64,000 nt of DNA. Origin: Pecten maximus (taxonomy: Eukaryota). This document shows positions 53,160-57,636 of the stretch, piece after piece. Below the pieces are notes generated by a model. That model worked only from the letters and a program-made list of their open reading frames with translations. It searched no databases and had not been told where the DNA came from. A program made the position numbers and the translations under genes. The stretch lies in the NCBI RefSeq assembly GCF_902652985.1, contig NC_047022.1, positions 21,452,001 to 21,516,000 of the forward strand. The letters are read 5' to 3'. Position 1 is the first letter of the stretch, and each line of letters begins with the position of its first letter.

Positions 53160-53833
53160 CTAAAGTAAACATACTTCATATGACATTCTATACAAGCACA
53201 CCAAGGCCGTTTTTATTTTTGCGGTCCAAACAGTTGGATAATTTAGACTGGTGTTGTTCGTTTATGAAACAAAGACGGACCTGGTGATTTTATATTGTTT
53301 TCAGATGAGCCTGGACAAAGACTTTCAAGGCCTGTATTAACATTTGCAGGTCCGTCAATATGTTTGAAATATTACATATTACAAATATTACATAAACAAA
53401 CTGGCCCCAACACTATACTGATTTCAATGTTAATTTATACTAAGGGAGATAACTACTCAAATTCTTATCAATCTTGTAACCTGTGATAGTGAATTCATAC
53501 GAAAGAAGAGAAAATGAACATGAATAAAAAGACAGTTTTGTGTTTTCCTCATTTTTTTTTTATTCCCTTGTCTATAAACAATTATATTTGACTCTGTATT
53601 GTGATGTTTGCGCTGATGATGATCTACAGATTCATATACCAGTTAACTGTAAACATCTGACCACCACTTCAGATCTAAGAGCAATTAACCAACAGTTAAA
53701 CAACCACATATTGATTACACCTTTTTGCTCATTGAAATATTCTTTCAATTGATTTTACTAACAATTGCTTGAGTACTAATGAAATATATATCTGAGCCTT
53801 AACAATACAAAATTACTCTACCTTTTATTTTAC

Positions 53834-53898
53834 CAAGTCGCCGATTTTCTCTGATGCTTTTTACTTCAGCAATCTTGTCAAGAGCTTTTCGTAGTAAC
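53834..53898 (-). CDS. SGF29: SGF29 coding exon 4 (alternative donor extends it to 53822)
   Basis: LLRKALDKIAEVKSIRENRRL. Confidence 0.9.
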
Positions 53899-54416: not shown

Positions 54417-54489
54417 TCTGCTTCTAGTTCAGCATCTTGCATGGCTGTTTTGTACAGACCTTTTAGCTTGTTCTTGTAATAAGGAGTCA
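54417..54489 (-). CDS. SGF29: SGF29 coding exon 3
   Basis: TPYYKNKLKGLYKTAMQDAELEAE. Confidence 0.94.
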
Positions 54490-55178: not shown

Positions 55179-55740
55179 AACAAGAGGCCTATGGGCCTTA
55201 ATGGTCACCTGAGTTTTGATATATTTTAGCATATTTGGCCGCTTTGACCTTGAATGAAGGTGAAGGTCATTCATTTGAACAAACTTGGTAGCCCTTTGTA
55301 CCAGCATGCTACAGACCTAATATTGGGTCTCTGGGCCTTTTGGTAAGATTTTAGCATATTTGACCCATGTGGCCTTGAATGAAAGTCAAGGTCATCCACT
55401 TGAACAAACTTGGTAGCCCTTCACCCCAACATGCTACATACCTAATATTGGGTCTCTTGGCCTACAGACCTAATATTGGGTCTCTGGGCCTTTTGGTTAT
55501 CAAGAAGTCGTTAAAGATTTAAGCATATTTGACCCCTGTGACCTTGAATGAAGGTCAAGGTCATCCACTTGAACAAACTTTGTAGCCATTCATCCAAACA
55601 TGCTACAGACCCAAAAATCAGGTCTCTGGGCCTGTTGGTAATTGAGAAGAAATTGAAAATGTAAATTGTTTATGACGGACGAGGCACGGCGAACGCCGCC
55701 GGACAAAAGCGATCACAATAGGTCAACTGAGACTTTGTCT
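55179..55740 (-). mobile_element. HINE family B-related copy in an SGF29 intron
   Basis: Reverse-complement monomers TGACCTTGAATGAAGGTCAAGGTCA..GAACAAACTTGGTAGCCC; terminal AACAAGAGGCCTATGGGCCT hairpin. Confidence 0.85.
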
Positions 55741-55791: not shown

Positions 55792-55867
55792 CTTTTTGTT
55801 CCTGCTGCATTCGTTCGTGTGTTTTTGAGATATTTGTGAGGTTGTGCTCTCCCCTAGCTCTTTCATC
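55792..55867 (-). CDS. SGF29: SGF29 coding exon 2
   Basis: DERARGEHNLTNISKTHERMQQEQK. Confidence 0.94.
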
Positions 55868-56204: not shown

Positions 56205-56410
56205 GTTTAATTTATTTATGGTTTATTTTGTTTAAAGTCTTATTAACAGCCAGTATCATTTAAGGACATGCCTGGTTTTGGAGGTGAAGGAAAGCCGGAG
56301 TACCCCAAGAAAAACCACTGACCTACGGTCAGTACCTGGCAGCTGCCCCACGTGGGTTTTGAACCCGCAACCCAGAGGTGACATTCTAACCACTCAGCCA
56401 CCGTGGCCCC
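56205..56410 (-). mobile_element. SINE copy (same family as 48728-48941) with an internal deletion
   Basis: TATTAACAGCCAG..CATTTAAGGAC..GAAAGCCGGAGTACCC..CTACGGTCAGTACCTGGC..CCACCGTGGCCC. Confidence 0.88.
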
Positions 56411-56489
56411 TGAGGTGCAGTATGATAAGGTTTTGATATATCTATGTAAGGATTGGCTTATTTATACACTGTTACATTTATTTTTGTAC

Positions 56490-56645
56490 CTGTACTTGGT
56501 GAATGAGATGATAAAGCTCCTTCAGCAGGTCTTTGATGCGAACCTCGGCCGCTGCAGTACTGCTTGTGGAGTTCGTATCAGAAGATGGACTATGACTACT
56601 GCCAGCCACGTTACTTCCTCCACCTCCAGACTTTGTGCGACCCAT
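56490..56645 (-). CDS. SGF29: SGF29 coding exon 1
   Basis: MGRTKSGGGGSNVAGSSHSPSSDTNSTSSTAAAEVRIKDLLKELYHLIHQVQ|gtac; ATG preceded by TAG-GAA. Confidence 0.88.
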
Positions 56646-57536
56646 TTCCTATATTCTTAAGCCTTCTTTTTCGTCACATGAAAGTGGCGGTCTTAGAGCT
56701 GATCACAACGATGTATTTCCATCTAGGTATAAATAATCAAAAACCTGGTCAAATACATCACAATGTAATTATATTACATGCATAAAATATTTGTCCTGCA
56801 TGGTTGCAGATGTGGATAAAATACTCCCAAGGTATTTCAAGTAGATCTACACATCATCATCTTTCATTCAGACTAATTTATACAGTATTACCAGTATGAA
56901 ATGGTCCCTGTGTATTGGACCAAGCCACATATATATGTGAATCATATATAACAAGCAAGCATAGGATTAATTTGCCATTTGTACAAGCTATGTACATGTG
57001 CTGATAATCTCATTCTGCCAATATGCAGTTTTTCTTGGATAAATATTTGTTACCAAATTAAACTTTCCTATTTCAGTCCATGAATGGGATTATGCTCTTT
57101 TCTATGTAATAGTTGATAGGAGTTTAGAATATGCTGGTGGTCAAGTGAATGATGGAGTTTTCAGATGAAAGGATGATGAGCAATTAATCTACTTATGTAT
57201 GTCAGCAGGTTCAAACTAAGCAGTCTACTGGTGCATCAGAAAAGCATTTGACACTTTTGGCTGTGTCAAATGCTTTAATTTCCCAATACAACAGTGAGTA
57301 CAATGATGTAGTTAAGAGTACTGGAGAGTGGTAATCCAGATTTTTTATGTATGTGTATTCGGCTTAAAAAAAACTTTATTTACTGATGTCAATCATTATT
57401 GTTGGCCCAGATGGAAGCACATAATATAAGGGGTCTTATCAGGGAGGTAAAACCAGAGCACAAAATTAAAGGAAAAACCATATGCATGTGCCTTGGTCAA
57501 GCAGATGACATGGAATGCTTTATTTACACATTTGAT

Positions 57537-57636
57537 CGGTAATGCTTGCCTTTCACATAGGCGTCTGGGGTTTGATTAATGATCGATGATCAGGAAATCA
57601 AACCCCAGACGCCTATATGAAAGGCAAACATTACCG
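57537..57636. repeat. Hairpin with 41-bp arms inside a degenerate SINE
   Basis: CGGTAATGCTTGCCTTTCACATAGGCGTCTGGGGTTTGATT ... AATCAAACCCCAGACGCCTATATGAAAGGCAAACATTACCG. Confidence 0.9.

What the first reader, a model, noticed from the sequence alone, without database searches (positions are those of the whole stretch)
56550..56645. SGF29 (H3K4me2/3 reader) starts with its own histone-H3-like tail: M-GRTKS-GGGGS
Seen: coding exon 1 encodes MGRTKSGGGGSNVAGSSHSPSSDTNSTSST before the conserved coiled-coil start (EVRIKDLLKELYHLI). The ATG is preceded in frame by TAG-GAA both in genomic DNA and if spliced to the putative 58178 donor. Established: the SGF29 tandem Tudor binds the free H3 N-terminus (A1) plus K4me2/3, Met is removed before Gly, and human SGF29 has only a few residues before this helix. 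Inference: the mature end G1-R2-T3-K4 is in exact register with H3 A1-R2-T3-K4 and sits on a flexible Gly/Ser linker of about 25 aa. It could be a methylatable histone mimic that autoinhibits or oligomerises the Tudor reader and so tunes SAGA/ATAC recruitment. I do not know of this being described.
Basis: partly seen in the sequence, partly recalled or inferred. Interest (0 to 1): 0.85.

Follow-up and report, generated by a model that had tools for sequence, protein, structure and literature searches.

The report
Conserved H3-like start of scallop SGF29
The scallop gene for SGF29, a protein that reads a histone H3 mark, really does begin with a short H3-like peptide (Gly-Arg-Thr-Lys) on a floppy linker; the peptide is conserved across molluscs, so it is probably functional, but whether it acts as a self-binding histone mimic is untested.

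Summary
On the minus strand, an ATG at 56645-56643 with an in-frame TAG two codons upstream opens exon 1 of a single-copy, 9-exon, 315-codon SGF29 gene of a pectinid scallop. It matches Mizuhopecten yessoensis SGF29-like at 96-100% over the coding part of each exon. Exon 1 encodes M-GRTK, about 30 Ser/Gly/Ala-rich residues, then the coiled-coil helix.

In 17 mollusc genera, G, R and K of residues 2-5 are invariant. Mean pairwise identity is 0.88 for residues 2-5, 0.38 for the linker and 0.81 for the folded rest. Every bivalve and cephalopod sampled has GRTK.

The wider picture weakens the strict H3 register. Some gastropods have GRSK or GRNK, heterobranchs PRxSK, annelids GRPK or GRVK, sea stars MRRTK or MRRAK and amphioxus MRRGR. 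Vertebrates, insects, ticks, a chiton and nemerteans lack the motif. The selected core is therefore an N-terminal x-R-x-K-[S/T/G] motif that happens to be in H3 register in most molluscs.

Binding to the protein's own Tudor pair and lysine methylation are untested. The complex prediction gave no verdict and AlphaFold2 leaves the tail disordered. No RNA reads could be obtained. The papers retrieved did not describe the motif.

The parts
56649..56651 (-). In-frame TAG stop two codons upstream of the start codon
   Evidence...TAG GAA ATG GGT...
56643..56645 (-). Start codon of SGF29 (G at -3, G at +4)
   Evidence: The RefSeq Mizuhopecten model P0227 and more than 25 transcript-derived ORFs of relatives start at the same Met.
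56631..56642 (-). Codons 2-5, G-R-T-K: the conserved N-terminal motif (mature residues 1-4 if Met is removed)
   Evidence: Invariant in 12 of 12 exon-1 ORFs of relatives. G, R and K are invariant in 17 mollusc genera, mean pairwise identity 0.88.
56541..56630 (-). Codons 6-35: disordered Ser/Gly/Ala/Thr-rich tether with a Gly run and a single conserved S-P site (S19-P20, 56586-56591)
   Evidence: Linker identity 0.38, length 22-48 aa, composition S 27%, G 15%, A 14%, exactly one SP in each of 17 molluscs. AF2 pLDDT <50 for residues 3-27 of P0227.
56490..56540 (-). Codons 36-52: start of the N-terminal coiled-coil helix; the exon 1 donor GT follows at 56488-56489
   Evidence: AF2 helix 28-76 in P0227.
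55792..55867 (-). Exon 2 (coiled coil)
   Evidence: tblastn; splice sites
54417..54489 (-). Exon 3 (coiled coil)
53822..53898 (-). Exon 4 (coiled coil)
53057..53159 (-). Exon 5 (linker helix before the Tudor pair)
52369..52551 (-). Exon 6: Tudor 1 with the acidic A1-binding pocket (DVDDID)
   Evidence: PDB SGF29 E=1e-22; PF07039
51487..51580 (-). Exon 7 (inter-Tudor segment and start of Tudor 2)
51188..51256 (-). Exon 8: Tudor 2 with the equivalents of cage residues Y238 and Y245
50580..50696 (-). Exon 9: Tudor 2 with the equivalents of F264 and D266, and stop TAA at 50580-50582

Best explanation
Shown: the ATG at 56645 is the true start of a scallop SGF29. The protein begins M-G-R-T-K on a roughly 30-residue disordered Ser/Gly-rich tether, ahead of the coiled coil that (in the literature) anchors SGF29 in the SAGA/ATAC acetyltransferase module. 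The tetrapeptide is under purifying selection across Mollusca. It is the molluscan form of an older bilaterian N-terminal basic motif, x-R-x-K-[S/T/G], that has been lost repeatedly (vertebrates, insects, chelicerates, a chiton, nemerteans). Inferred: Met is removed before Gly, leaving a free G1-R2-T3-K4 end. Inferred mechanism: the motif is a tethered, histone-tail-like ligand. It docks its Arg/Lys, and in molluscs its free amine, into an acidic histone-tail pocket inside or next to the complex. Candidate pockets are the SGF29 Tudor A1/K4 site, the ZZ domain of the ATAC subunit ZZZ3 (which reads unmodified H3 1-4), and WD40 or PHD tail readers. Docking would compete with real H3 tails and tune recruitment. 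The exact H3 register is a lineage-specific refinement, or a coincidence, laid on the R-x-K core.
For: Start and stop codons. Gene identity and structure; single copy. All 12 exon-1 ORFs of relatives start MGRTK. Bivalves from Solemya to Mya and Octopus have MGRTK. Gastropods have MGRTK, MGRSK or MGRNK, annelids MGRPK or MGRVK, Lingula MRHKSG, sea stars MRRTKSG or MRRAKS, urchins M-K-M-RRGKS and amphioxus MRRGRG. Identity is 0.88 for residues 2-5, 0.38 for the linker and 0.81 for the rest. The tail is disordered and the helix starts at residue 28. Tudor pocket residues are conserved. For precedent, PAF15 VRTK and H3 ARTK are both read through the free N-terminal amine by the UHRF1 PHD finger (PMC9757060). 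ZZZ3 ZZ in ATAC binds H3 residues 1-4 through the free Ala1 amine regardless of K4 methylation (PMC6138639). Basic N-terminal peptides of FOG1, SALL4 and BCL11A bind the acidic RBBP4 surface (PMC10679446).
Against: There is no binding, modification or expression data. Complex prediction was uninformative and AF2 gives no sign that the tail docks on the Tudor pair. The motif was lost in many lineages without visible change in the Tudor pair, so it is dispensable for core SGF29 function. Gly lacks the Ala methyl group that fills the A1 pocket. An N-terminal Gly may be acetylated, which would block readers of the free amine. The conserved R-x-K-S/T could equally be a kinase or other modification site.
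Confidence: 0.45

Rival explanations
1. After Met removal, the lysine (mature K4) is di- or trimethylated by a SET1/MLL- or SET7-type enzyme. The SGF29 tandem Tudor then binds G1 plus K4me2/3 in cis (autoinhibition) or in trans (oligomerisation).
For: The register with H3 A1-R2-T3-K4 is exact in the window and in all bivalves, cephalopods and some caenogastropods. The Tudor cage and A1-pocket residues are conserved. ARTKme3 and the A1 site suffice for binding (PMC4589357). The tether of 22-48 aa plus the coiled coil could allow reach in cis or in trans.
Against: T varies (S, N; P or V in annelids). Heterobranchs shift the lysine by one (PRxSK). Deuterostome forms start MRR, where Met is probably retained. 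There is no evidence of methylation. Gly replaces Ala. No support came, and neither counts as evidence against.
Confidence: 0.12
2. The motif is a basic regulatory site unrelated to histone mimicry. It could be a phospho- or acetyl-acceptor cluster (R-x-K-S/T plus the conserved S-P in the tether), a weak NLS-like patch, or an arginine anchor for DNA or the nucleosome acidic patch.
For: The widest conserved core is R-x-K-[S/T/G], with RRxK in deuterostomes, which resembles K/R-K/R-x-K/R. One S-P site is kept in all 17 mollusc linkers. The peptide also matches H2A/H4 GRGK-x-GG at 5 of 7 positions (my knowledge of histone tails), so the likeness is to basic tails in general.
Against: The motif keeps its position at the very N-terminus in most lineages. 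Gly after Met is invariant in the mollusc genera that carry the G-R form and in four of the five annelid-like sequences, though heterobranchs have Pro and Owenia Arg. Neither fact is explained by an ordinary internal kinase site or NLS. The scallop form has only two basic residues and fails the classical NLS consensus.
Confidence: 0.25
3. The conserved feature is the N-terminal glycine itself, as a signal for N-myristoylation or the Gly/N-degron (CRL2 ZYG11B/ZER1) pathway.
For: The MG start is invariant in molluscs other than heterobranchs and the chiton, in four of the five annelid-like sequences and in two of the three myriapods. Ser or Thr at position 6 fits the NMT preference.
Against: Arg directly after Gly is excluded by the PROSITE myristoylation pattern (my knowledge). 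Deuterostome orthologues have Arg and heterobranchs Pro in place of Gly but keep R-x-K. SGF29 is a nuclear chromatin protein.
Confidence: 0.05
4. The resemblance to H3 is a chance feature of a neutral, disordered N-terminal extension with no function.
For: A 4-residue match is short, and the extension is absent from vertebrates, insects and ticks.
Against: Conservation of residues 2-5 equals that of the folded domains, while the adjoining linker diverges, across lineages separated since the early Palaeozoic.
Confidence: 0.05

Closest known systems
PAF15 (PCLAF) N-terminus V1-R2-T3-K4, read by the UHRF1 PHD finger like H3 A1-R2-T3-K4
   Same: It is a non-histone protein whose mature N-terminus is x-R-T-K after Met removal. 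Recognition depends on the free amine of residue 1 (PMC9757060).
   Different: Here the first residue is Gly, the carrier is itself an H3 reader, and no binding is shown.
Histone H3 tail as ligand of the SGF29 tandem Tudor pair and of the ZZZ3 ZZ domain (ATAC)
   Same: Both pockets read the free N-terminal amine plus the first four residues (PMC4589357; PMC6138639). The scallop peptide shares R2, T3 and K4.
   Different: The scallop peptide has G1 instead of A1. The Tudor pair needs K4me2/3, which is unknown here. An AGSGSG peptide did not bind ZZZ3 ZZ, so residues 2-4 matter.
N-terminal basic motif of FOG1, SALL4 and BCL11A (RRK core) binding the acidic face of RBBP4/7
   Same: It is a short basic motif at the extreme N-terminus of a chromatin regulator, docking into a pocket that also binds the H3 tail (PMC10679446). 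Deuterostome SGF29 forms (MRRxKS) look most like it.
   Different: The scallop form has G-R-T-K, not R-R-K. RBBP4/7 are not known SAGA/ATAC subunits (my knowledge). No binding data exist.
Autoinhibited readers and automethylated histone mimics (UHRF1 tandem Tudor blocked by its own basic linker/PBR; G9a ARKT automethylation), from my knowledge
   Different: Those peptides are internal and mimic H3K9. Neither was checked with the tools here.
Histone H2A/H4 N-termini (S-G-R-G-K-x-G-G)
   Same: The scallop G-R-T-K-S-G-G matches G-R-x-K-x-G-G at 5 of 7 positions (my knowledge of the histone sequences).
   Different: The register relative to the free amine differs by one residue. Thr replaces Gly after Arg, so the PRMT-type GRG context is missing.

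Membership tests
SGF29 (SAGA-associated factor 29) | C-terminal tandem Tudor domain (Pfam PF07039) | tested here: met
   PDB SGF29 chains at E=1e-22. PF07039 hits on exon 6 (39.2 bits, above the 23.8 cut-off); weaker partial hits on exons 7 and 9.
SGF29 (SAGA-associated factor 29) | Kme2/3 cage (human Y238, Y245, F264, D266) and acidic A1 pocket (D194/D196 region) | tested here: met
   The motifs LALYPQTTCFY, VLFEDTSY and VDDID are present in window exons 6, 8 and 9. Residue roles are from PMC4589357.
SGF29 (SAGA-associated factor 29) | N-terminal coiled coil, and orthology to annotated SGF29 | tested here: met
   AF2 helices 28-76 and 81-128 in P0227. The coding part of each exon is 96-100% identical to Mizuhopecten SGF29-like. 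The gene is single copy in the genome.
Free-N-terminus histone H3 mimic (PAF15 type) | Small residue after the initiator Met, so that Met is removed and residue 1 carries a free amine next to Arg | not testable with these tools
   The sequence is M-G-R. Met removal before Gly is established MetAP specificity, but the acetylation state is unknown.
Free-N-terminus histone H3 mimic (PAF15 type) | R2-T3-K4 in register and conserved in orthologues | tested here: inconclusive
   The register is exact in bivalves, cephalopods and some gastropods. G, R and K are invariant in the 17 mollusc genera analysed, but T varies. The register is lost in heterobranchs and deuterostomes.
Free-N-terminus histone H3 mimic (PAF15 type) | Demonstrated binding to an H3-tail reader, and lysine methylation for the Tudor model | tested here: inconclusive
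   Complex prediction gave no verdict (score 0.01). AF2 shows no docking. Modified residues cannot be modelled here.
N-myristoylation signal | Gly 2, an uncharged residue at position 3, a small residue at position 6 | tested here: not met
   Position 3 is Arg. The PROSITE PS00008 pattern, recalled from memory, excludes R there.
RBBP4-binding N-terminal RRK motif (FOG1/SALL4/BCL11A) | Contiguous R-R-K core at the N-terminus | tested here: not met
   The scallop has G-R-T-K. Only deuterostome orthologues have RRxK.
Classical monopartite NLS | K-K/R-x-K/R | tested here: not met
   Only R3 and K5 are basic in the first 35 residues.

The most novel reading that the evidence does not exclude
Invertebrate SGF29 carries a true H3(1-4) mimic at its mature N-terminus. 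The mimic would be read inside the acetyltransferase complexes, either by the protein's own Tudor pair once the lysine is methylated, or without modification by the ZZ domain of ZZZ3 in ATAC. This would give a built-in competitor that gates SAGA/ATAC engagement with H3K4me3 promoters. Vertebrates, insects and ticks would have lost this regulatory layer.
Probability: 0.15. Interest if true: 0.8.

Novelty: new variant of a known kind. Interest (0 to 1): 0.55.

Why it matters
SGF29 links H3K4me3 to H3 acetylation by SAGA and ATAC. It would also be the first case I know of in which an H3K4me reader carries its own ligand-like N-terminus. Even if mimicry fails, the analysis defines a previously unremarked N-terminal motif, x-R-x-K-S/T, with a conserved S-P site in its tether. 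The motif is ancient in bilaterian SGF29 and has been lost repeatedly. That gives natural with-and-without comparisons and a cheap peptide-binding experiment.

Tried and rejected
- **Source contigs:** No codon-level test was possible.
- **Names for the exon-1 ORFs:** The listing of cluster members gave no names for them. Cluster member P0177 is unrelated.
- **Domain search:** Pfam finds nothing in exon 1.
- **Complex prediction:** Complex prediction of the Tudor pair (P0227 160-316) against the tail (2-36) scored 0.01, below the mark, with no verdict. It is evidence neither for nor against.
- **Monomer model:** the AF2 model of P0227 with a 56-sequence alignment leaves residues 3-27 at pLDDT <50, with no sign of docking.
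- **Papers:** Bian et al. 2011 (PMC3160252) is not held. Literature searches for SGF29 with 'histone mimic', and for its N-terminal region, retrieved no paper describing this motif.
- **Earlier scan notes:** nothing relevant.
- **Joined model:** Searches used single exons by reference, or the database orthologue P0227 as a proxy.
- **Rejected readings:** myristoylation (Arg after Gly), a classical NLS (too few basic residues) and a neutral chance match (conservation argues against it).

Full report
**1. The observation**

- The feature lies on the minus strand. Translating 56487-56660 gives a stop, Glu, then M-G-R-T-K-S-G-G-G-G-S. A Ser/Thr/Ala-rich stretch follows, then the helix RIKDLLKELYHLIHQVQ, with a GT donor at 56489-56488.
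- The in-frame TAG is at 56651-56649. The start codon has G at -3 and G at +4.
- Only the AG that ends this TAG could serve as an acceptor between stop and start. Its upstream tract is purine-rich.

**2. The gene**

- Exon 6 (52369-52551) matches the human SGF29 tandem Tudor crystal structures at E=1e-22 and Pfam PF07039.
- tblastn of SGF29 proteins maps nine exons from 56645 down to 50580. I fixed the boundaries junction by junction. All are GT-AG, and the phases add up to 945 coding bases, or 315 codons.
- The coding part of each exon is 96-100% identical to the RefSeq protein 'SAGA-associated factor 29-like isoform X2' of the scallop Mizuhopecten yessoensis (P0227, 316 aa). That protein starts at the same Met.
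- A second pectinid protein (P0235, 97% to P0227; 88-100% to the window over the coding part of each exon) comes from 1.5-kb contigs that encode the whole spliced protein. This is indirect transcript evidence that exon 1 joins exon 2 as modelled.
- The gene is single copy in a genome of 918,306,378 bases in 3,983 contigs. From memory, that size fits the Pecten maximus assembly. This is a recollection, not a test.
- The human cage residues Y238, Y245, F264 and D266, and the acidic D194/D196 region, are conserved in the scallop (residue roles from PMC4589357).

**3.

- A search with the exon-1 ORF found 12 short ORFs from other assemblies. All begin MGRTK, then two to three variable residues, a Gly run, a drifting Ser-rich stretch and the same helix.
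- Two full-length searches gave named orthologues:

| Group | N-terminus |
|---|---|
| Bivalves (Solemya, Tegillarca, Mytilus, two unionids, Mactra, Mya, Dreissena, pectinids, an oyster-like group) | MGRTK |
| Octopus and a second cephalopod-like sequence | MGRTK |
| Pomacea, Babylonia | MGRTK |
| Littorina, Haliotis, Patella | MGRSK |
| Lottia, Gigantopelta | MGRNK |
| Heterobranch gastropods (Physella, Elysia, Bradybaena) | MPRxSKGKG |
| Chiton Liolophura | short start, no motif |

- In 17 mollusc genera, mean pairwise identity is 0.88 for residues 2-5 (G, R and K invariant). It is 0.38 for the linker (22-48 residues), 0.63 for the first 18 helix residues and 0.81 for the rest.
- The tetrapeptide is therefore as constrained as the folded domains. 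Chance resemblance in a neutral tail is rejected for this lineage.

**4. The wider picture**

| Group | N-terminus |
|---|---|
| Annelid Paralvinella and unnamed annelid-like sequences | MGRPK, MGRVK |
| Owenia | MRKAKS |
| Lingula | MRHKSG |
| Myriapods | MGRAG, MGRVN, MRRAA |
| Sea stars | MRRTKSG, MRRAKS |
| Urchins and one unnamed sequence | M-K-M-RRGKS and M-T-K-M-RRQKS (a Met directly before RR) |
| Crinoid | MSSARRGK |
| Amphioxus | MRRGRG |
| Trichinella | MPRQKGS |
| An unnamed group | MSD-x-KSRR-x-KGS |
| Vertebrates, insects, ticks and other chelicerates, hemichordates, nemerteans | no motif |

- The element shared most widely is a basic x-R-x-K-[S/T/G] motif at, or within a few residues of, the N-terminus, followed by a Ser/Gly-rich tail.
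- The exact H3 register (small residue, R, T, K at a free amine) holds only in most molluscs. Where residue 2 is Arg, the initiator Met is probably retained (established MetAP specificity), so a free amine next to the Arg cannot be the ancestral requirement.
- The scallop peptide G-R-T-K-S-G-G also matches the H2A/H4 pattern G-R-x-K-x-G-G at 5 of 7 positions (my knowledge of those tails). The likeness is to basic histone tails in general.

**5. Structure**

- AlphaFold2 on P0227 with a 56-sequence alignment gives a mean pLDDT of 85.5.
- Residues 3-27 are below pLDDT 50. Helices run 28-76 and 81-128, and the Tudor pair is confidently folded. The tail is a flexible tether, and nothing suggests it docks.
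- Complex prediction of the Tudor pair against residues 2-36 scored 0.01, below the mark, with no verdict. It counts neither way. Modified lysine cannot be modelled with these tools.

**6. What is known**

- The SGF29 Tudor pair has an acidic pocket for H3 A1 and a cage for K4me2/3. The first four residues, ARTKme3, are essentially all that is needed (PMC4589357).
- Human SGF29 has its coiled coil at residues 3-98 (PMC10630320).
- There is a precedent for an N-terminal x-RTK mimic: PAF15 V1-R2-T3-K4 is read like H3 by the UHRF1 PHD finger through the free amine (PMC9757060).
- The ATAC subunit ZZZ3 reads the first four H3 residues through the free Ala1 amine. K4 methylation has no effect on that binding. 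The TADA2A/B ZZ domains do not bind H3 (PMC6138639).
- Basic N-terminal peptides of FOG1, SALL4 and BCL11A bind the acidic face of RBBP4 (PMC10679446).
- The papers retrieved by searches for SGF29 with 'histone mimic', and for its N-terminal region, did not describe this motif.

**7. Interpretation**

- Shown: a true start codon, a conserved N-terminal motif, a disordered tether with one conserved S-P site, and an intact reader domain.
- Inferred: Met removal, a free Gly amine, and a role as a tethered histone-tail-like ligand for an acidic tail-reading pocket. I put this general reading at about 0.45.
A non-mimic modification or basic-anchor site gets about 0.25.
- Glycine-specific signals (myristoylation is disfavoured by Arg at position 3) and neutral chance each get about 0.05.

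**8. Limits**

- One oyster-like transcript ORF (P0254, 89 members) has an in-frame upstream ATG 21 codons before MGRTK. In that taxon the motif could be internal if the upstream ATG is used.
- Against that, the Met directly before G-R is kept in every molluscan sequence that carries the G-R form, and there is a stop codon upstream in the scallop. Both argue that this Met is the initiator.

**9. Verdict**

The mechanism is open. This is a new, untested variant of the histone-tail-mimic idea, worth a peptide-binding experiment.

Noticed in passing
window 56586-56591 (-), codons S19-P20: Each of the 17 mollusc SGF29 linkers contains exactly one S-P dipeptide, usually as [S/T]-x-S-P-[S/A]. This may be a conserved proline-directed phosphorylation site in the tether.
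   Followed up: partly
window 56693-56722 (-): An upstream ATG sits directly after a possible AG acceptor (tacctag|ATGGAA...). It opens a 9-codon uORF in another frame (ATG GAA ATA CAT CGT TGT GAT CAG CTC TAA), which would matter if this stretch is part of the 5'UTR.
   Followed up: no
window 48734-48941 and 56226-56409: Two same-orientation copies (83-90% identical) of a roughly 185-nt dispersed repeat. One lies in SGF29 intron 1 and one downstream of the gene. It looks SINE-like, but ARAGORN finds no tRNA.
   Followed up: partly
window 45620-46931 and 55214-55632: A 145-bp satellite (9 copies, 93% matches) lies downstream of SGF29. Related 125-nt units lie in intron 2 in the opposite orientation. 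Both give repeated short ORFs beginning MKVKVIHLNKLGSP.
   Followed up: partly
window 43062-43931: A C/T-rich minisatellite (periods 19, 27 and 54; about 870 bp) produces long artefactual ORFs of 284-309 aa in three frames.
   Followed up: no
window 57537-57636: A 41-nt inverted repeat, 95% complementary with an 18-nt loop, looks like a MITE hairpin. It lies in the region between exon 1 and the candidate 5'UTR exon.
   Followed up: no
P0254 (oyster-like transcript ORFs, 89 members): This ORF extends 21 codons upstream of MGRTK from an in-frame ATG (MNKAKEPS...). In that taxon the 5'UTR is open in frame, unlike in the scallop.
   Followed up: no
P0335 (Dreissena polymorpha isoform X2, 286 aa): This isoform keeps MGRTK and part of the linker but skips the first helix segment, probably through an alternative donor in exon 1.
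   Followed up: no
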